DNA of 64,000 nucleotides from Mobula hypostoma (Eukaryota): positions 102,858,001-102,922,000 of the forward strand of contig NC_086104.1 in assembly GCF_963921235.1 (NCBI RefSeq). The letters run 5' to 3'. Below the pieces are notes generated by a model. It searched no databases and was not told where the DNA came from. It saw nothing but the letters and a program-made list of their open reading frames with translations. The position numbers and the translations under genes were made by a program. Below are positions 4,555 to 62,809 of this stretch, in pieces (position 1 is the stretch's first letter; every line of letters begins with the position of its first letter).

Positions 4555-4715
4555 NNNNNNNNNNNNNNNNNNNNNNNNNNNNNNNNNNNNNNNNNNNNNN
4601 NNNNNNNNNNNNNNNNNNNNNNNNNNNNNNNNNNNNNNNNNNNNNNNNNNNNNNNNNNNNNNNNNNNNNNNNNNNNNNNNNNNNNNNNNNNNNNNNNNNN
4701 NNNNNNNNNNNNNNN
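4555..4715. other. Run of 161 N (gap or masked sequence)
   Basis: N run. Confidence 0.99.
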
Positions 4716-23230: not shown

Positions 23231-23934
23231 TAAAAGATGATGAGAGGCATTGATTGTGTGGATAATCAGAGGATTTTTCCCAGGGCTGAAATGGCTAACA
23301 CAAGAGGACACAGGTTTAAGGTGCTTGGAAGTAGGTACAGAGGAGATGTCAGGGGTAAGTTTTTCACAAAGAGAATGGCGAGTGCGTGGAACGGGCTGCC
23401 AGCAACAGTGGTGGAGGTGGAAACAATAGGGTCTTCTAAGAGACTGTTGGATCGGGACATGGGGCTTAGGAAAATAGAGGGCTATGGGTTACCTGAGGTA
23501 ATTTCTGAAGTAAGTACATGTTCGGCACAGCATTGTGGGCCGAAGGGCCTGTATTGGGCTGTCGGTGTTCTTTGTTTCTAAACTCTGAGTGAAAAATTTG
23601 CCCTTCAGGCCCATTAGATCTTTAACCTCTCACAATACATTTATGTTCTTTATTTATTCTCTGGCCTGGGTGAAAAAGACTGTGACCATCTATCCTATCT
23701 GAACCCCTCACAGTTATATAAACCCCTATAAGATAACCCCTAAGCATCCCACATTCCAGAGAAAACAGTCCCAGTCTATCCAGTCTCTCCTTGCAACGCA
23801 AATTCTTCAGTCACAGTCACATCCTTGTGAGTGTTTTCTGCACCCTCTCCAGCTGAATCACATTGTACCTGCAGCGAGGTGACCAGAACTACGCACTATA
23901 CCCCAAAGGCAATCTCACAACATCTTGTACAGTT

Positions 23935-24520: not shown

Positions 24521-27500
24521 CATAGAAACATAGAAACATAGAAAATAGGTGCAGGAGTAGGCCATTCGGCCCTTCGAGACTGCACCGCCATTTATTATGA
24601 TCATGGCTGAGCATCCAACTCAGAACCCCGCCCCAGCCTTCCCTCCATATCCCCTGATCCCCATAGCCACAAGGGCCATATCTAACTCCCTCTTAAATAT
24701 AGCCAATGAACTGGCCTCAACTGTTTCCTGTGGCAGAGAATTCCACAGATTCACCACTCTGTGTGAGGAAGTTTTTCCTAATCTCGGTCCTAAAAGGCTT
24801 CCCCTTTATCCTCAAACTGTGACCCCTCGTTCTGGACTTCCCCAACATTGGGAACAATCTTTCTGCATCTAGCCTGTCCAATCCCTTTAGGATTTTATAC
24901 GTTTCAATCAGACCCCCCCTCAATCTTCTAAATTTCAACGAGTACAAGCCCAGTTCATCCAGTCTTTCTTCATATGAAAGTCCTGCCATCCCAGGAATCA
25001 ATCTGGTGAACCTTCTTTGTACTCCCTCTATGGCAAGGATGTCTTTCCTCAGATTAGGGGACCAAAACTACACACAATACTCCAGGTGTGGTCTCACCAA
25101 GGCCTTGTACAACTGCAGTAGTACCTCCCTGCTCCTGTACTCGAATCCTCTCGCTATAAATGCCAGCATACCATTCGCCTTTTTCACCGCCTGCTGTACC
25201 TGCATGCCCACTTTCAATGACTGGTGTATAATGACACCCAGGTCTCGTTGCACCTCCCCTTTTCCTAATCGGCCACCATTCAGGTAATAATCTGTTTTCC
25301 TATTTTTGCCACCAAAGTGGATAACTTCACATTTATCCACATTAAATTGCATCTGCCATGAATTTGCCCACTCACCCAACCTATCCAAGTCACTCTGCAT
25401 CCTCTTAGCATCCTCCTCACAGCTAACACTGCCACCCAGCTTCGTGTCATCCGCAAACTTGGAGATTCTGCATTTAATTCCCTCATCCAAGTCATTAATA
25501 TATATTGTAAACAACTGGGGTCCCAGCACTGAGCCTTGCAGTACCCCACTAGTCACCGCCTGCAATTCTGAAAAGGTCCCGTTTATTCCCACTCTTTGCT
25601 TCCTGTCTGCTAACCAATTCTCCATCCACATCAATACCTTACCCCCAATACCGTGTGCTTTAAGTTTGCACACTAATCTCCTGTGTGGGACCTTGTCAAA
25701 AGCCTTTTGAAAATCCAAATATACCACATCCACTGGTTCTCCCCTATCCACTCCACTAGTTACATCCTCAAAAAATTTTATGAGATTCGTCAGACATGAT
25801 TTTCCTTTCACAAATCCATGCTGACTTTGTCCGATGATTTCACCGCTTTCCAAATGTGCTGTTATCACATCTTTGATAACTGACTCCAGCAGTTTCCCCA
25901 CCACCGACGTTAGGCTAACTGGTCTATAATTCCCGGGTTTCTCTCTCCCTCCTTTTTTAAAAAGTGGAGTTACATTAGCCACCCTCCAATCCTCAGGAAC
26001 TAGTCCAGAATCTAACGAGTTTTGAAAAATTATCACTAATGCACCCACTATTTCTTGGGCTACTTCCCTAAGTACTCTAGGATGCAGACCATCTGGCCCT
26101 GGGGGTTTATCTGCCTTCAATCCCTTCAATTTACCTAACACCACTTCCCTACTAACATGTATTTCACTCAGTTCCTCCATCTTACTGGACCCTCTGTCCC
26201 CTACTATTTCTGGAAGATTATTTATGTCCTCCTTAGTGAAGACAGAACCAAAGTAATTATTCAATTGGTCTGCCATGTCCTTGCTCCCCATAATCATTTC
26301 ACCTGTTTCTGTCTATAGGGGACCTACATTTGTCTTTACCAGTCTTTTTCTTCTTACATACCTATAAAAGCTTTTACAGTCAGTTTTTATGTTCCCTGCC
26401 AGTTTTCTCTCATAATCATTTTTCCCCTTCCTAATTAAGCCCTTTGTCCTCCTCTGCTGAACTCTGAATTTCTCCCAGTCCTCAGGTGAGCCACTTTCTC
26501 TGGCTAATTTGTATGCTTCTTGTTTGGAATTGATACTATCCCTAATTTCTCTTGTCAGCCACGGGTGCACTACCTTCCTTGATTTATTCTTTTGCCAAAC
26601 TGGGATGAACAATTGTTGTAGTTCATCCATGCAACCTTTAAATGCTTGCCATTGCATATCCACCGTCAATCCTTTAAGTGTCATTTGCCAGTCTATCTTA
26701 GCTAATTCACGTCTCATACCTTCAAAGTTACCCCTCTTTAAGTTCAGAACCTTTGTTTCTGAATTAATTATGTCACTCTCCATCTTAATGAAGAATTCCA
26801 CCATATTATGGTCACTCTTACCCAAGGGGCCTCTCACGACAAGATTGCTAATTAACCCTTCCTCATTGCTCAAAACCCAGTCCAGAATAGTAGTTGGTTC
26901 CTCGACATGTTGGTTCAAAAAACCATCCCGCATACATTCCAAGAAATCCTCTTCCTCAGTACCTTTACCAATTTGGTTCATCCAATCTACATGTAGATTG
27001 AAGTCACCCATTATAACTGCTGTTTCTTTATTGCACACATTTCTAATTTCCTGTTTAATACCATCTCCGACCTCACTACTACTGTTAGGTGGCCTGTACA
27101 CAACTCCCACCAGCGTCTTCTGCCCCGTAGTGTTACGCAGCTCTACCCATATCGATTCCACATCTTCCCGGCTTATGTCCTTCCTTTCTATTGCGTTAAT
27201 CTCTTCTTTAACCAGCAACGCCACCCCACCTCCCCTTCCTTCATGTCTATCCCTCCTGAATATTGAATATCCCTGAACGTTGAGCTCCCATCCTTGGTCA
27301 CCCTGGAGCCATGTCTCTGTGATCCCAACTATATCATAATCATTAATAACAATCTGCACTTTCAATTCATCCACCTTATTACGAATGCTCCTTGCATTGA
27401 CACACAAAGCCTTCAGGCGCTCTTTTACAACTCTCTTAGCCCTTGTACAATTATGTTGAAAAGTGGCCCTTTTTAATGCTTGCCCTGGATTTGTCGGCCT

Positions 27501-28032
27501 GCCACTTTTACTTTTCTCCTTAGTACTATTTGCTTCTACCCTCACTTTACACCCCTCTGTCTCTCTGCACTGGTTCCCATCCCCCTGTTGCGAACTAACC
27601 TCCTCACGCCTAGCCTCTTTAATTTGATTCCCACCCCCCAACCATTCTAGTTTAAAGTCACCTCAGTAGCCCTCGCTAATCTCCCTGCCAGGATATTGGT
27701 CCCCCTAGGATTCAAGTGTAACCCGTCCTTTTTGTACAGGTCATGCCTGCACCAAAAGAGGTCCCAATGATCCAAAAACTTGAATCCCTGCCCCCTGCTC
27801 CAATCCCTCAGCCACGCATTTATCCTCCACCTCATCGCATTCCTACTCTCGCTGTCGCGTGGCACAGGCAGTAATCCCGAGATTACTACCTTTGCGGTCC
27901 TTTTTCTCAACTCCCTTCCTAACTCCCTATATTCTCCTTTCAGGACCTCATCCCTTTTCCTACCTATGTCATTGGTACCTATATGTACCACGACCTCTGG
28001 CTCCTCACCCTCCCACTTCAGGATATCTTGGA
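24521..28032 (-). mobile_element. Young CR1 LINE: ORF1 C-terminal esterase part and near-intact ORF2 (APE endonuclease plus RT)
   Basis: ORFs 27647-28096, 26313-27641, 25068-26297 and 24717-25001. The ORF2 pieces are in one frame, separated by TAG at 26313 and 25068. Motifs GITETW, GDFN, SDH, QGSVLGP, FADDT; (CATAGAAA)3 tail. Confidence 0.95.
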
Positions 28033-28529
28033 CAGAAATTAACGCCCAGAAATTTAAAGTTTCTGCCCTCTGCACCTCTGATCCCCTAATGGGCACTGGC
28101 TAATGGATGCTCAATTTCTTCCTACTCTCGTCAGGAATTAGTTTGTCAGTTTTGTGGATGTTGAATGACAGGTGGTTGTTGTGGCACCACTCACTCAGAT
28201 TTTTAAATTTATAGATGACTTCAAATTTGGTGGTATATTTCATAATTTAAAATAAATCTAATCTAATCTAATATAATATAAAGTACATAGATGTTACTAT
28301 ATTCAACCTCCAAGATTAATCTTCTTGTGAGCATATACAGTAAATCCAAGAAACACAGTAGAATCACTGAAAGACTGCACCCAACAGGAGCAGGTGTAGG
28401 TTACCAATACCCTCAGGGCTGGGTTCCGATGATGGAGGCAAGAACCCACACGGTCTCACAGCTGAACTACACTCCACAGGACCCTTTCATTCACTGTGTT
28501 CATCTTCCCTGGTTTAACTTCCCAAAACA

Positions 28530-33432: not shown

Positions 33433-33618
33433 TNNNNNNNNNNNNNNNNNNNNNNNNNNNNNNNNNNNNNNNNNNNNNNNNNNNNNNNNNNNNNNNNNNN
33501 NNNNNNNNNNNNNNNNNNNNNNNNNNNNNNNNNNNNNNNNNNNNNNNNNNNNNNNNNNNNNNTGCAGGGCCATGACGGCCGAGCTCTGGAAGCGCAGGTC
33601 GGTCTTGAAGTCCTGAGC
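33433..33618 (-). pseudogene. H3: 5'-truncated histone H3 copy (contains the 129-N run at 33434-33562)
   Basis: [19 protein letters not shown] on the minus strand; the 5' half is replaced by a Penelope-like fragment from ~33620. Confidence 0.85.
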
Positions 33619-57514: not shown

Positions 57515-58224
57515 TTCTGGATGAGGAAGTGGAGGGATGGATTAGTAAGTGTGTCATCAGCAAAAAAGGTTGGGGGTGTTGTGGATAGTGTGGAGGGCTG
57601 TCAGAGGTTACAATGGACATTGATAGGATGCAAAACTGGGCTGAGAAGTGGCAGATGGAGTTCAACCCAGATAAGTATGAAGTGGTTCATTTTGATAGGT
57701 CAAATATGATGGCAGAATATAGTATTACTGGTAAGACTCTTGGCAGTGAGCAGGATCAAAGGAATCTTGGGGTCCGAGTCCATAGGACACTCAAAGCTGC
57801 TGTGCAGGTTGACCCTGTGGTTAAGAAGGCATACGGTGCATTGGCCTTCATCAATCGTGGGATTGAGTTTAAGAGCTGAGAGGTAATGTTACAGCTATAT
57901 AGGACATTGGTCAGACCCCACTTGGAGTACTGTGCTCAGTTCTGGTCGCCTCACTACAGGACGGACGTGGAAACCATAGAAAGGGTGCAGAGGAGATTTA
58001 CAAGGATGTTGCCTGGATTGGGGAGCATGCCTTATGAGAATAGGTTGAGTGAACTCGGCCTTTTCTCCTTGGAGCAACGGAGGATGAGAGGTGACCTGAT
58101 AGAGGTGTGCAAGGTAATGAGAGGCATTGATCGTGTGGATGGTCCGAGGCTTTTTCCCAGGGCTGAAATTGCTAGCATGAGAGGGCATAGTTTTAAGATG
58201 CTTGGAAGTAGGTACAGAGGAGAT
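57515..58224 (+). mobile_element. CR1 3' part, left half of a split host copy (resumes at 62201-62425)
   Basis: DIDRMQNWAEKWQMEFN...LGSRYRGD; same subfamily as 22070-23580. Confidence 0.88.
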
Positions 58225-61200
58225 ACTATACACTAGAATACAACAGCACAGTACAGGCCCTTCTGCCCTTGATGTTGTGCCATCCCACATATTCCTTAAA
58301 AAAAAGTACTAAACCCACACTACCCTGTAACCCTCTATTTTTCTTTCATCCATGTGCCTGTCCAAGAGGCTGTTAAATACCTCTAATGTTTTAGCCTCCA
58401 CCACCGTCCCTGGCAAGTCATTCCAGGCACCCACAACCCTCTGTGCTTTAAAAAAAACTTACCCCTGATGTCTCCCCTCCCTTAACTTTGTACATATGCC
58501 CTCTGGTGTTTGCTATTTGAGCCCTGGGAAACAGGTACTGGCTATCCACCCTATCTATGCCTCTCATAATCTTGTAGACCTCTATCAAGTCCCCTCTCAT
58601 CCTTCCATGCTCCAAAGAGAAAAGTCCCAGCTCCGCTAACCATGCCTCATAAGACTTGTTTTCCAATCCAGGCAACATCCTGGTAAATCTCCTCTGCACC
58701 TTCTCCATAGCTTCCACATCCTTCCTATAATGAGGTGACCAGAGTCTCACCAAAGATTTGTAGAGCTGCAACATGACCTCTCTACTCTTGGACTTTGTAC
58801 AGTTGCAACGTGACCTCTCCACTCTACTCTTGAACTCCCTAACCTTATTAATGAAGCCTAGCATCCCACAGGCCTTCTTAACTATCCTATCAAGCTGTGC
58901 AGCGACCTTGAGGGATGTATGGATTTGAACCCCAAGATCCCTCGGTTCATCCACACTCTTAAGTAACAGACCATTAACCGTGTACCCAGCCTCCTGATTT
59001 GTCCTTCCAAAATGCATCACCTCACACTTATCTCGATTGAACTCCATCTGCCACTTTTCTGCCCAACTCTGCATCCTCTCTATATCCTCTTGTAACCTTC
59101 GACAACCTACAGCTCCATCCACAATTCCTCCAATCTTTGTGTCATCCGCAAACTTACTCACCCATTCTTCCGCCTCTTCATCCAGTTCATTTATAAAAAT
59201 CACCATGTGGTCTACATGGATTGCTAAAATCCATGTAGACCACATCTACCGCCCTACCCTCATCAATTTCTTTTGTTACCTCTTCAAAAAACTCAATTAG
59301 GCTCATGAGGCACGACCTTCCCTTCACAAAGCCATGTTGACTATCCTTGAGTAGACTGTACTTCTCCAAATGCTCGCAGATCCTATCCTTAAGAATCCTT
59401 TCCAATAGTTTGCAGACCACCGACGTAAGACTCACCGGTCTATAATTCCCAGGATTCTCCCTATTACCTTTTTTTAAACAAGGGAACTACATTTGCCATT
59501 CTCCAATCCTCCGGCACCTCCCCTGCAGCCAAAGAGGATTCAAAGATCATAGCTACTGCTCCAGCGATCTCTTTTCTCACTTCCCACAGCACTTATCAAT
59601 CTTGATGTTTTTAAGAAGATCCAATGTTACTTTTTCCTTAATCTCCACATTGTCCAGCACACAGGCCTGTTCTATTTCGACCTCACCCCACATTGTCCAG
59701 CACACAGGCCTGTTCTATTTCGACCTCACCCTGATCAAGGTCCTTTTAACTTGTGAATACTGAAGCGAAGTATTCATTTAGGACCTCCCCAACCTCCTCC
59801 ACCTTCAGGCACATGTTGCCTTCTTTATCCTTTAGCGGCCCCACCTTCATTCTTGTCATCCTTCTGTTCTTCACATACGCAAGGGGTTCTCCTTAATCCT
59901 ATATGCCAAGGCCTTCTCAGGCTCCCTTTGAGCTTGCCCCAAGTCCTTTCTTAAACTCCTTCCTGGCTATCCTATAATTCTCGTGAGCCCCTCCTGCTTC
60001 TTATATCTAACATATGCTTCCTTCTTCCTCTTGACGAGTTGCCTCACGTGTTTCGTCAGCTATGGTTCCTTATTCCTGCCATTTTTTCTTTGTCTCAGTG
60101 GGACAAACCTATCCTGAACCCAGGACAAGTGGTCCCTAAACTTCCTCCACATTACTTCTGTGCTTTCATCCTTGAACATCTGTTTCCAATTTACTCTCGC
60201 TAGTTCCTGCCTCATCCCTTCATATTTAGCCCTTCCCCGGTTAAGCACTTTCCCATTTTGTCTGTTTTTATCCTTTTCCATAGCTATGCTGAAGCTCAGG
60301 GAGTTGTGGTCACTCTCACCAAAATGCTCCCCCACCAAGAGGTCTGCCACCTGACCAGGTTCATTACCCAGAACTATATACAGTATGGCCTCTCCTCTCG
60401 TCCGCTGGTCCACATACTATTTTAGGAATCCTTCTAGAACACACCTGACAAATTCAGCCCCATCTATCCCCCTTGCAGTCAGGAGGTGCCAGTCAATATA
60501 AGGGAAGTTGAAATCACCCCTAACTACAACCCTGTATTTCCTGCACCATTCTGAAATCTGCCTGCTTATCTGCTCCTTCGTGTCCTGAGGGCTATTTGGG
60601 GGCCTATAGACTACTCCCAGCACAGTGATTGATCCCTCCCTATTTCTGACTTCCACCCACACCGACTCAATGGATACTCCCTCTACAGCGTTTCCCTTTT
60701 TATAGCCGTGATACTATCCCTGAGCAGTAATGCTACTCCCCCCGCCTCCCCTTTTCTACCTCCCATCCTATTCCGTTTAGAACACCTAAACCCCGGTACC
60801 TGCATCAGCCAATCCTGCCCTTCCTCCAGCCAAGTTTCAGTAACGGCCACAACATCGTAGTTCTACATACTGATCCATGCTCTAAGTTCATCCCCTTTAT
60901 TCCTAATACTCCTAGCGCTGAAATAGACACATTTCAACCACTCTAATTGGCTACGTTTATGTTTTGTCCCCTGCCTGTTCTTCCTCACCAACTCAGAACA
61001 CATAGCATCATGCCCTTGTCCTTCCACTCTAATCTCTGCACTCAGATTCTGATTCCCACCCCCCTGCCAAGCTAGTTTAAACCCTCCCCAACAGCTCTAG
61101 CAAACCTGCCCACCAGGATATTGGTCCCTTTCCAGTTCGGGTGCAGCCTGTCCTTTTTGTACAGGTCAGACCTTCCCCAGAAGAGATCCCAATGATCCAG

Positions 61201-62200
61201 AAATCTTAACCCCTGCCCCCTGCACCAACTCTTCAGTCACGCATTCATCAGCTGTTTGATTGGGCAATTGAAAATTGAAAGCTTAAACAAATAAAAAGAG
61301 GGGTAGCTCAAGCAGAGCGGACAGTGAGTGAGTGGGCCAGTGAAGGAGTGGAGCTTTGAGGCTTCGGCGAGCAGAGGCTGAGGACGAGCTTGCTCCCAGT
61401 GAGGTAAGGCCGGCTAAGTTTCCTTAATTAATTTAATCAACTTAGGAGTTGGTAATGGAGGCAGTAGATAGGGCAGTCCAGTGATCTGATTGTAAGACGT
61501 GGGAAGTCAGGGACAGCACAATTGTCTCTGATGAATACACCTGCAAAAGGTGCATCCAGCTGCAGCTCCTGTTAAACCGAGTTAGGGAACTGGAGCTGGA
61601 GCTGGATGAACTTCGGATCATTCGGGAGGCAGAGGCAGTAATAGATCGGAGTTTCAGGGAGACAGTCACCCCTAAGAGTCAGGAGACAGGTAACTGGGTG
61701 ACTATCAGGAGAGGGAAGGGGAATAGGCAGAAAGAGCAGAGCACCCCTGTGGCCGTTCCAATCAACAATAAATATTACGTTTTGGATATTGTTGGTGGGG
61801 ATGACCTACCAGGGACAAGTTCTAGTGGTCGCATCTCTGGCACCGAGACTGCACCCTCAGCTCAGAAAGGAAGGAGGGAAAAGAGGAGAGCAGTAGTGAT
61901 AGGGGATTCGATAGTTAGGGGGACAGATAAGAGGTTCTGTGGGAAAGATCGAGAATCCCAGATAGTCTCGGATCGAGTTCTCAGTATTCTCAGGAGAGAG
62001 GATGAGCAGCCAGATGTCATGGTCCACGTGGGGACCAATGACATATATAGGAGTAGAGATGAGGTCCTGAAGAAGAAATATAGGGAGTTAGGAAAGAAGT
62101 TAAAAAGCAGGACCTCAAGGGTGGTAATCTCGGGATTGCTGCCTGTGCCGCAAGACAGAGAGGGTAGGAACAGGAGGTTATGGCAGATGAATGCATGGCT
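58225..62200 (-). mobile_element. Near full-length CR1 with inverted 5' segment (61253-62200 lies on the + strand)
   Basis: Minus-strand tail, ORF2 and ORF1 C-terminus at 58225-61252; plus-strand 5' UTR and ORF1 (CKRCIQLQLL, VIGDSIVRG, VHVGTND) at 61253-62200; GAGAT TSD. Confidence 0.82.
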
Positions 62201-62425
62201 GAGATGTCAGGTGTAAGTTTTTTACGCAGAGAGTGCTGAGTGCGTGGAATGGGCTGCCAGTAGTAGTGGTCGAGGCAGAAACAATAGGAACTTTTAAGAG
62301 ACTCCTGGATAGCTACACGGAGCTTAGAAAAATAGAGGGCTATGGGTAAAGCCTAGGTAGTTCTAAGGTAGGGACATGTTCAGCACAGCTTTGTGGGCCG
62401 AAGGGCCTGTACTGTGCTGTATGTT
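62201..62425 (+). mobile_element. CR1 3' end, right half of the split host copy
   Basis: gagatgtcaggtgtaagttttttacgcagagagtg... is collinear with 23343-23580. Confidence 0.85.
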
Positions 62426-62809
62426 TCCTTTATCTGCCTCTCCTTGCTCCACTTCTCTAACTGATCAATCCGCTCTGTAATCTACAATAACCTTCTTAAC
62501 AATCTACAAACACTCCTAATTTTGTGTTGTCCATCAACATACTGATGAAACCTTGTGCAATTACATCTAAATCATTTATATGAATAACAAATAACAAGGG
62601 TCCCAACATTGACCACAGTGGCATACCATTAGTCACTGGCCTCCATTCCAAGATGGTTAGTGAGACTGTAGATGACTCCAAAATTAGTGGCATAGTGGAC
62701 AGCGAAGATTATTCAGGATTGGAGTGGGATTTTGATGAAATAGTCCATTGAATGGCAGGTTATATAGCAGAATGTAAAGTGTAAAAGAGAGGAAAGAGAG
62801 TGGATATCT

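What the first reader, a model, noticed from the sequence alone, without database searches (positions are those of the whole stretch)
58220..62205. Near full-length CR1 insertion with a 5' inversion and TSD (twin-priming-like architecture)
Seen: a CR1 host copy stops at ...gtacagagGAGAT (58224) and resumes at GAGATgtcagg (62201). The uninterrupted relative at ~23335 reads gtacagaggagatgtcagggg, so the 3976-bp insert is flanked by a 5-bp duplication. Inside it, tail, ORF2 and ORF1 C-terminus run on the minus strand to ~61252. The 5' UTR and ORF1 N-terminus run on the plus strand and end at the same ORF1 position (QMNAWL), with ~20 bp duplicated at the breakpoint. Established: this geometry (inverted 5' part, internal breakpoint facing the TSD) is the twin-priming signature described for mammalian L1. 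Inference: a CR1-clade element underwent the same process, which I know mainly from L1.
Basis: partly seen in the sequence, partly recalled or inferred. Interest (0 to 1): 0.7.

Follow-up and report, generated by a model that had tools for sequence, protein, structure and literature searches.

The report
Twin-primed CR1 jumping gene in ray
An old CR1-type jumping gene in this ray genome landed inside an older CR1 copy with its first ~950 bases flipped, the pattern known from human L1 as twin priming. This is a clean example from a LINE group where cell assays on the one CR1/L2-group element tested (zebrafish ZfL2-1) found no such flips.

Summary
A + strand CR1-like host copy stops at 58224 and resumes at 62201. 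Related copies read straight through that point, and 5 bp (GAGAT) are duplicated.

The 3976-bp insert is one decayed, near full-length CR1-type LINE in two arms:
- **Minus arm, 58225-61252:** tail, reverse transcriptase, endonuclease and the ORF1 C-end.
- **Plus arm, 61253-62200:** about 200 bp of 5'UTR and ORF1 residues 1-261.

The arms meet at one ORF1 position and share a 20-nt inverted duplication (17/20 identical). The breakpoint end of the flipped arm abuts the duplicated target, with 2-3 nt of microhomology. This is the twin-priming geometry described for L1, down to the size of the internal duplication (L1 median 22 bp).

I rate twin priming at insertion at about 0.8. A later inversion, two separate events or misassembly each need coincidences.

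Three things were not testable here:
- reads spanning the junctions;
- an orthologous empty or un-inverted site;
- the family's exact 5' end.

No paper in the held library reports twin priming for CR1. One cell-assay study found none for a 5-bp-duplication element and argued the overhang is too short.

Earlier notes of this scan (s1-144199, s1-142523) report other 5'-inverted CR1 copies in the same genome. I did not check them.

The parts
57517..58224 (+). Host: left part of an older, 5'-truncated CR1-like copy (RT C-terminal region). It ends ...GTACAGAGGAGAT.
   Evidence: tblastn against the ORF2 of the 25k copy, residues 270-408. Alignment A1 to the uninterrupted relative at 23k.
58220..58224 (.). 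Target-site duplication, left copy (GAGAT). The + strand 3'-OH here is the inferred first primer.
   Evidence: Contig joints 58219->62201 with 5 letters fitting both sides, in 4 runs.
58225..58300 (-). 3' end of the insert: hairpin followed by a short non-poly(A) repeat-like tail (...TGTATTCTAGTGTATAGT).
   Evidence: Fold (stem GGCACAAC.../...UGUGCUGU around GGGC/GCCC). Alignment A1 with the host and 23k tails.
58225..61252 (-). 3' arm of the insert (cDNA from the first primer): tail, RT (58730-59592), endonuclease (60012-60967), ORF2 start (~61027) and the ORF1 C-end (61075-61248). It is decayed, with many stops, a ~190-nt RT deletion and a ~27-nt deletion.
   Evidence: Pfam RVT_1 and Exo_endo_phos_2 on ORF pieces. 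tblastn mapping. 84-91% nt identity to the same-subfamily copy in L002.
61233..61252 (-). Internal duplication, copy on the 3' arm (ORF1 codons ...LMNA*L; P0001 residues 256-261).
   Evidence: Inverted repeat I8, 20 nt, 85%. Alignment A2.
61253..61454 (+). Inverted arm, 5'UTR part. The inversion junction lies at 61252-61254. The exact family 5' end is not determined.
   Evidence: Many family contigs in four runs cover 61277-61321, so this is family sequence and not filler (tables 3-4). No match in other copies held here.
61455..62202 (+). Inverted arm, ORF1 N-terminal 5/6 (zinc-knuckle-like start, coiled coil, GDSL/SGNH esterase), with one stop at 61482-61484. The last 2-3 nt (62201-62203, GA or GAG) fit both the element and the target.
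   Evidence: tblastn of P0001 residues 1-261, 66% identity, E 1e-99. Pfam Lipase_GDSL_2. Alignment A2.
62183..62202 (+). Internal duplication, copy on the inverted arm (ORF1 ...QMNAWL).
62201..62205 (.). Target-site duplication, right copy (GAGAT). The minus-strand 3' end ...ATCTC here is the inferred second, internal primer.
62201..62450 (+). Host: right part of the older CR1-like copy, through its hairpin and tail.
   Evidence: Alignment A1. Fold. Family loose ends at 62426 continue as (TTTCTATG)n.

Best explanation
One retrotransposition event of a CR1-type LINE was resolved by twin priming.

**Inferred steps**
1. The element's endonuclease nicked the + strand after GAGAT (58224). That 3'-OH primed reverse transcription at the RNA's 3' tail and copied tail, ORF2 and the ORF1 C-end (58225 to about 61252).
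2. The second strand was cut 5 bp away. Its freed 3' end (...ATCTC) paired through 2-3 nt with the same RNA inside ORF1 (at ...GCUGA(G)). It primed a second cDNA that ran to, or close to, the RNA's 5' end (62200 down to about 61255).
3. The first cDNA ran 20 nt past the internal priming site, which gave the 20-nt inverted duplication.
4. The two cDNA ends were then joined.

**Result.** A dead-on-arrival, near full-length copy with its 5' ~950 bp inverted, enclosed by a single 5-bp target duplication. It has since decayed.

**Shown:** the geometry, the duplication, the overlap and the microhomology. **Inferred:** the order of the priming events and the use of one RNA molecule.
For: - **Host continuity and the 5-bp duplication:**
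- **Arms map to complementary parts of one element and meet at one point:** P0001 residues 1-261 on the + strand and 256-314 on the - strand. The inverted duplicate is 20 nt, 17/20 matching. Four other copies are collinear through that point.
- **Orientation fits twin priming:** the breakpoint end of the inverted arm faces the duplication, and the 5'UTR faces inward.
- **Microhomology:** 2-3 nt at the internally primed junction. In L1, about 70% of 5'-inverted copies have 2-5 bp there (PMC2912911).
- **Internal duplication size:** 20 nt here. In L1 twin priming, 17% of events carry an internal duplication, median 22 bp (bioRxiv 10.1101/2024.08.27.596794).
- **TSD length:** 5 bp is the CR1/L2 norm of 3-5 bp (PMC4245944).
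- **Same best relative for both arms:** P0011 is the best match of each arm among all copies held (78.5% aa on the plus arm and 67-68% aa on the minus arm; all other copies held score 71% or less and 59% or less).
- **The structure is old and real:** the duplicated 20-mers differ at 3 sites. The minus arm is 9-16% from a same-subfamily copy.
Against: - It is a single, old, decayed example.
- The duplication is only 5 bp, and 2-3 of those bases are ambiguous with the element.
- No orthologous empty or un-inverted allele and no junction-spanning reads were obtained (one search gave only short repeat contigs).
- The family 5' end, and so any microhomology at the inversion junction, could not be defined.
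- The same-subfamily test for the plus arm rests on one protein (P0011), with no DNA.
- In cell assays a CR1/L2-group element with 5-bp duplications (ZfL2-1) produced no 5' inversions. The authors argued that a ~5-nt overhang is too short to prime (PMC4245944).
Confidence: 0.8

Rival explanations
1. An ordinary full-length minus-strand CR1 insertion was later hit by a local inversion of its 5' ~950 bp. For example, two breaks, one of them staggered by 20 nt, could give the inverted duplication.
For: The final arrangement is topologically the same as the one observed. Inversions with an inverted duplication at a staggered breakpoint are known in general (own knowledge).
Against: One breakpoint would have to fall within about 2 bp of the boundary between the element and the duplication, at roughly 1e-3 odds. 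Only the ORF1-side breakpoint is duplicated. No inverted copy of the host-side sequence lies near 61253. The 2-3 nt microhomology and the 20-nt duplication size are what twin priming predicts.
Confidence: 0.08
2. Twin priming on two different RNA molecules of the same CR1 subfamily. The second primer used another transcript.
For: It is indistinguishable by geometry. An earlier scan note (s1-143373, not checked here) proposes such a two-RNA event for an RTE LINE/SINE pair in this genome.
Against: The first cDNA stops 20 nt beyond the second priming site. That is expected if both enzymes worked on one RNA. With two RNAs the end points need not coincide.
Confidence: 0.06
3. Two unrelated events: a 5'-truncated minus-strand copy, plus a separate plus-strand copy that later lost everything 3' of ORF1 residue 261 by deletion.
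For: CR1 fragments are very dense here, with at least 15 in 64 kb. Head-to-head pairs do occur, for example L001 3883-6323 (-) and 6823-8495 (+).
Against: It needs the truncation point and the deletion point to agree within 20 nt (about 1%). It also needs the deletion to end exactly at the host's duplicated GAGAT, and the host to remain perfectly continuous. A LINE fragment without a 3' end cannot insert by itself.
Confidence: 0.03
4. Assembly artefact: a mis-oriented segment in a repeat-rich region.
For: The region is all repeats. I could not lay junction-spanning reads. The runs of N in the window are far away, at 4555-4715 and 33434-33562.
Against: Only 20-nt imperfect repeats flank the segment, too short to mislead a long-read assembler. 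An artefact would not reproduce a duplication-bounded twin-priming geometry with diverged duplicates (17/20).
Confidence: 0.03

Closest known systems
Twin-primed (5'-inverted) L1 insertions of mammals (Ostertag & Kazazian 2001; statistics in PMC2912911 and bioRxiv 10.1101/2024.08.27.596794)
   Same: A single target duplication around both arms. The inverted 5' segment has its 3'-most position at the duplication. There is a small internal duplication (20 nt here, against an L1 median of 22 bp) and 2-3 nt of microhomology at the internally primed junction.
   Different: The element belongs to the CR1 group and has no poly(A) tail. The duplication is 5 bp, whereas 5'-inverted L1 copies have 10-20 bp. 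The inverted arm appears to reach the 5'UTR, whereas most L1 cases are also 5'-truncated.
Zebrafish ZfL2-1 / CR1-1_DR retrotransposition in cultured cells (PMC4245944)
   Same: A CR1/L2-group LINE with an ORF1 and an endonuclease-RT ORF2, a stringent-type 3' end, and a duplication peak of about 5 bp.
   Different: In those assays no 5' inversion was recovered, in either HeLa-RC or DT40 cells. The authors proposed that a ~5-nt overhang cannot prime. Here a natural 5-bp-duplication insertion shows the inversion.
Amniote CR1 (chicken repeat 1) elements (PMC4316615, PMC8665684)
   Same: ORF1 plus an endonuclease/RT ORF2. A 3' hairpin followed by a short repeat tail: the host family tail is (TTTCTATG)n, against ATTCTRTG in amniotes. 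After elasmobranch hits, the nearest RT hits are from turtles and birds.
   Different: This is a ray lineage with an esterase-type ORF1. Its placement inside CR1 proper, as opposed to neighbouring L2/Rex1 groups, was not tested by phylogeny.
Twin-primed L1 in the same ray genome (scan note s1-142519)
   Same: Same host genome and same type of 5' inversion.
   Different: A different LINE clade (L1, long duplication). I did not re-examine that locus.

Membership tests
Twin-priming product (5'-inverted LINE insertion) | One target-site duplication flanks the whole two-arm insert | tested here: met
   GAGAT at 58220-58224 and 62201-62205. The host is continuous in the 23k relative and in paralogue contigs of 4 runs, with 5 letters fitting both sides of the joint.
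Twin-priming product (5'-inverted LINE insertion) | The non-inverted arm carries the element's 3' end directly at one duplication copy | tested here: met
   The hairpin and tail end at 58225, next to GAGAT.
Twin-priming product (5'-inverted LINE insertion) | The inverted arm abuts the other duplication copy with its 3'-most element position, and its 5'-most position faces the inversion junction | tested here: met
   ORF1 residue ~261 lies at 62200-62204, and the 5'UTR lies at 61253 onward.
Twin-priming product (5'-inverted LINE insertion) | The arms are adjacent in element coordinates, with only a small deletion or duplication | tested here: met
   20-nt duplication, P0001 residues 256-261. 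The L1 median is 22 bp.
Twin-priming product (5'-inverted LINE insertion) | Microhomology between the target overhang and the element at the internally primed junction | tested here: met
   GA (against the element's own other arm) or GAG (against the other family copies) at 62201-62203. It is short, and 2 nt would arise by chance about 1 time in 16.
Twin-priming product (5'-inverted LINE insertion) | Microhomology or a defined joint at the inversion junction | tested here: inconclusive
   The family 5' end is unknown. No same-subfamily 5'UTR copy was found.
Twin-priming product (5'-inverted LINE insertion) | Both arms derive from one subfamily and have the same age | tested here: inconclusive
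   Both arms have P0011 as best relative. The nearest relatives of each arm are at a similar distance: 84-91% nt for the minus arm and 78.5% aa for the plus arm. No DNA-level reference exists for the plus arm.
Twin-priming product (5'-inverted LINE insertion) | Pre-insertion empty site at the orthologous locus, and no un-inverted allele | not testable with these tools
CR1-clade LINE | ORF2 with an apurinic-type endonuclease and a reverse transcriptase | tested here: met
   Exo_endo_phos_2 and RVT_1 on ORF pieces, each below the Pfam cut-off because they are fragments. tblastn to a near-intact ORF2 in the window.
CR1-clade LINE | CR1-like ORF1 with an esterase (SGNH/GDSL) domain (Kapitonov & Jurka 2003, as cited in PMC4245944) | tested here: met
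   Lipase_GDSL_2 on the plus arm. 66% identity to the intact 314-aa ray ORF1 P0001, which carries PF13472.
CR1-clade LINE | 3' hairpin plus a short (octamer) microsatellite tail, with no poly(A) | tested here: met
   Hairpins in the host and insert tails. The host-family tail is (TTTCTATG)n, against ATTCTRTG in amniotes. The insert's own tail is a degenerate ATTCTAGTG-like end.
CR1-clade LINE | RT phylogeny places it in CR1 rather than in L2, Rex1 or other neighbours | not tested
   No reference set was on hand. Indirect support only: after elasmobranch hits, the best RT hits are turtle and bird proteins at 40-44%.
CR1-clade LINE | Short target duplications (peak 3-5 bp) | tested here: met
   5 bp here. 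The norm is as cited in PMC4245944.

The most novel reading that the evidence does not exclude
Twin priming is a regular outcome of CR1 retrotransposition in rays despite overhangs of only ~5 nt. The proposal that short overhangs preclude internal priming (PMC4245944) would then not hold in vivo. The frequency of 5' inversion would be set by the host (elasmobranch repair or RNase H context) rather than by the LINE clade. Unchecked scan notes of further 5'-inverted CR1, L1 and other elements in this genome point the same way.
Probability: 0.3. Interest if true: 0.55.

Novelty: new member of a known kind. Interest (0 to 1): 0.42.

Why it matters
Twin priming has been documented almost only for mammalian L1. 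The one comparative cell-assay study held here saw no 5' inversions for a CR1/L2-group element and explained this by its short 5-nt overhang.

This is a natural CR1 insertion resolved to the base. Its target is known exactly because it landed in another repeat. It shows that 2-3 nt of pairing from a 5-nt overhang can suffice.

It gives a concrete template for a genome-wide census of such copies. That census would test whether 5' inversion depends on the LINE or on the host. The locus has no evident consequence for the ray, because the copy was dead on arrival.

Tried and rejected
- **Fetching full-length same-subfamily copies to date both arms.** The two best ORF1 hits (P0001, P0011) lie on chromosome-size records for which no DNA is served. 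P0041 likewise.
  - L001 holds only a 74%-identical family.
  - L002 holds a same-subfamily copy, but it is 5'-truncated in RT.
  - A short N-terminal ORF1 query found no closer relatives.
  - An exact 23-mer of the 5'UTR found nothing in metagenome contigs.
- **Laying public runs to bridge the junctions or find an empty site.** Only ~200-770-nt repeat contigs came back. They confirmed the host family's continuity and the private deletions of this copy, but not the junctions.
- **Aligning the 5'UTR to other copies to find the family 5' end.** No similarity.
- **CpG decay per arm.** Values were 0.32 and 0.41, not discriminating.
- **Inversion by recombination between the inverted, homologous 3' regions of host and insert (I1-I3, I6).** Rejected. 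Undoing such an inversion does not yield any simple precursor.
- **Snap-back self-priming.** Rejected. The inverted arm holds upstream sequence that is not present in the other arm.
- **Further 5'-inverted copies in the window.** A scan of all CR1 pieces found none.

Full report
**1. What is there**

The window is packed with CR1-like LINE fragments, at least 15 in 64 kb. Best protein hits come from stingrays and devil rays (Hemitrygon, Mobula, Hypanus). Earlier notes of this scan call the genome a ray.

At 57517-58224 a + strand, 5'-truncated CR1-like copy (the host) runs through the RT C-terminal region and stops at ...GTACAGAGGAGAT. It resumes at 62201 with GAGATGTCAGG... and continues to its hairpin and tail near 62440.

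The relative at 23335-23355 reads GTACAGAGGAGATGTCAGGGG without interruption. When four public ray runs were laid on the stretch, short contigs of paralogous copies joined 58219 to 62201 with 5 letters fitting both sides (7, 13, 7 and 2 contigs). Loose ends at 58224 continued GTCAGGGGTAAG.... So a 3976-bp insert (58225-62200) sits in the host with a 5-bp target-site duplication, GAGAT.

**2. Anatomy of the insert**

I mapped the insert against an intact 314-aa ray ORF1 protein (P0001) and a nearly intact ORF2 from the copy at 25068-27641 of this window.

| Part | Coordinates | Strand |
|---|---|---|
| Tail and hairpin | 58225-58300 | - |
| RT | 58730-59592 | - |
| Endonuclease | 60012-60967 | - |
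| ORF1 residues 256-314 | 61075-61248 | - |
| 5'UTR (~200 bp) | 61253-61454 | + |
| ORF1 residues 1-261 | 61455-62204 | + |

Pfam sees RVT_1, Exo_endo_phos_2 and Lipase_GDSL_2 on the ORF pieces. All are below the curated cut-off because the pieces are short.

The two arms share ORF1 residues 256-261. This is a 20-nt inverted repeat, 61233-61252 against 62183-62202, with 17 of 20 positions matching. Four other copies (19k, 27k and 44k in the window, and L001 from a public contig) are collinear through this point. The normal element is therefore not inverted there.

The insert covers all of ORF1 and nearly all of ORF2, so it is near full-length. It is also decayed:
- One stop in the ORF1 N-part and many stops and frameshifts in ORF2.
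- About 190 nt of RT missing at 59204-59220.
- About 27 nt missing near 58743.

**3. Junctions at base level**

- **Right junction.** The plus arm follows the family up to ...GGCTGA(G). The next bases in this element's other arm are AGAG, and in the other family copies GGGA. Here the sequence goes on as the host's GATGTCAGG. So 2 nt (GA), or 3 nt (GAG) against the other copies, fit both the element and the duplicated target.
- **Left junction.** The + strand runs ...GAGAT | ACTATACAC..., which is the complement of the element's tail.
- **Inversion junction.** On the minus arm, family homology starts at 61252. Bases 61253-61254 cannot be assigned. Many family contigs in all four runs cover the 5'UTR from at least 61277 (tables 3-4), so it is family sequence and not filler. 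I could not fix the family's 5' terminus because no same-subfamily 5' copy could be fetched.

**4. Mechanism**

Read on the element's sense (minus) strand, the order is:
- the duplication;
- the antisense of ORF1 residue 261 back to the 5'UTR;
- ORF1 residue 256 on through ORF2 to the tail;
- the duplication.

This is the product expected if both 3' ends of the staggered target break primed reverse transcription on one RNA. The + strand end ...GAGAT primed at the 3' tail. The minus-strand end ...ATCTC primed inside ORF1.

The first cDNA overran the internal priming site by 20 nt. For L1, that overrun is the accepted origin of internal duplications. They occur in 17% of twin-primed L1 inserts, with a median of 22 bp (bioRxiv 10.1101/2024.08.27.596794). 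Microhomology of 2-5 bp at the internally primed junction is seen in about 70% of 5'-inverted L1 copies (PMC2912911). A 5-bp duplication is the CR1/L2 norm of 3-5 bp (PMC4245944, citing Ichiyanagi & Okada 2008).

The geometry, duplication, overlap and microhomology are shown by the sequence. The order of priming and the use of a single RNA are inferred.

**5. One source or two?**

Among every copy I could compare, the Mobula hypostoma protein P0011 (itself an internally deleted copy, ORF1 N-part fused to RT) is the best match of both arms:
- **Plus arm:** 78.5% aa over 172 residues. The next best is L001 at 71%.
- **Minus arm:** 67-68% over RT residues 183-304. All other copies held are at or below 59%.

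The minus arm is 84-91% identical at DNA level to a same-subfamily copy in L002. The duplicated 20-mers differ at 3 sites. These figures are mutually consistent with one old insertion. They are a weak test, because no DNA-level reference exists for the plus arm.

**6. Rivals**

- **Later inversion of the 5' 950 bp.** One break would have to hit the element/duplication boundary to within about 2 bp. It leaves the microhomology unexplained.
- **Two independent events.** Two breakpoints would have to agree within 20 nt, a deletion would have to end exactly at the duplicated GAGAT, and the host would have to stay intact.
- **Recombination between the inverted, homologous 3' regions of host and insert.** Undoing it does not give a simple precursor.
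- **Snap-back synthesis.** It would duplicate the neighbouring sequence, not supply the missing upstream part.
- **Misassembly.** Only 20-nt imperfect repeats flank the segment, and the duplicates have diverged. I could not check spanning reads.
- **Two-RNA twin priming.** It cannot be told apart by geometry. It is less likely because the first cDNA stops right at the second priming site.

**7. Is it CR1?**

The following fit the CR1 group:
- Domain content: an esterase-type ORF1 and an endonuclease-RT ORF2.
- A 3' hairpin.
- A non-poly(A) repeat tail. The host-family tail is (TTTCTATG)n from contig loose ends, against ATTCTRTG in amniote CR1 (PMC8665684).
- A short duplication.

After elasmobranch hits, the RT piece's best relatives are turtle and bird proteins at 40-44%. 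I ran no RT phylogeny, so placement against L2 or Rex1 neighbours is inferred.

**8. Novelty**

Searches for twin priming together with CR1 found no report of it for this clade in the held library. Ichiyanagi & Okada 2008, the nested-target survey of vertebrate L2, CR1 and RTE copies, is not held, so a mention there cannot be ruled out.

PMC4245944 recovered 5' inversions only with human L1 in human cells, plus one Nimb-2_DR insert in DT40 cells. It found none with the 5-bp-duplication element ZfL2-1, and proposed that a ~5-nt overhang is too short to prime. This locus is a natural counter-example.

Notes s1-144199 and s1-142523 of this scan report other 5'-inverted CR1 copies in the same genome, and s1-142519 reports a twin-primed L1. 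I did not test them, and they are not independent evidence.

**Verdict.** The finding is real and correctly read. It is a new example of a known mechanism in a clade where it was not expected, of moderate interest to LINE specialists, with no visible effect on the host.

Noticed in passing
window 59204-59245: About 190 nt of the RT domain are missing compared with the same-subfamily copy L002:7368-7562. At the deletion point sits a perfect 18-nt palindrome: 59205-59222 is the inverted copy of the native 59228-59245. It looks like a fold-back or template-switch repair scar. It is perfect in an otherwise ~10% decayed copy, so it may be later than the insertion.
   Followed up: partly
window 59645-59730: A perfect 43-bp tandem duplication inside the linker between endonuclease and RT. 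The 100% identity suggests a recent event after the insertion.
   Followed up: no
window ~58743: This copy lacks about 27 nt encoding the conserved ...RPHLEYC.QF... motif. Hundreds of family contigs in four runs continue here with ACTGAACACAATACTCCAAGTGTGG...
   Followed up: partly
window 25068-28033 (-): A well-preserved CR1 copy of another family. Its ORF2 is split once into 442-aa and 409-aa ORFs. The ORF1 part begins only at about residue 186 of P0001. I used it as the ORF2 map.
   Followed up: partly
L001 3883-6323 (-) and 6823-8495 (+): A head-to-head pair of CR1 copies on a public 'metagenome' long-read contig (ENA ERZ21784934). The two copies overlap in element coordinates (both hold endonuclease sequence), so these are two insertions and not twin priming.
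   Followed up: partly
proteins P0015, P0065, P0069, P0116, P0168: Proteins labelled Pseudomonas aeruginosa, Klebsiella pneumoniae, Proteus mirabilis and Nocardia match this ray CR1 ORF1 or RT: 55-65% identity for the first four, 43% for Nocardia. They sit on 0.7-4-kb contigs. Most likely this is fish DNA contamination in bacterial assemblies.
   Followed up: no
protein P0011 (Mobula hypostoma gene model): An annotated 'uncharacterized protein' that is an internally deleted CR1 copy: ORF1 residues ~1-175 fused in frame to the RT N-part.
   Followed up: no
window 62466-62666 (-): Another CR1 RT fragment on the minus strand, directly after the host copy's tail.
   Followed up: no
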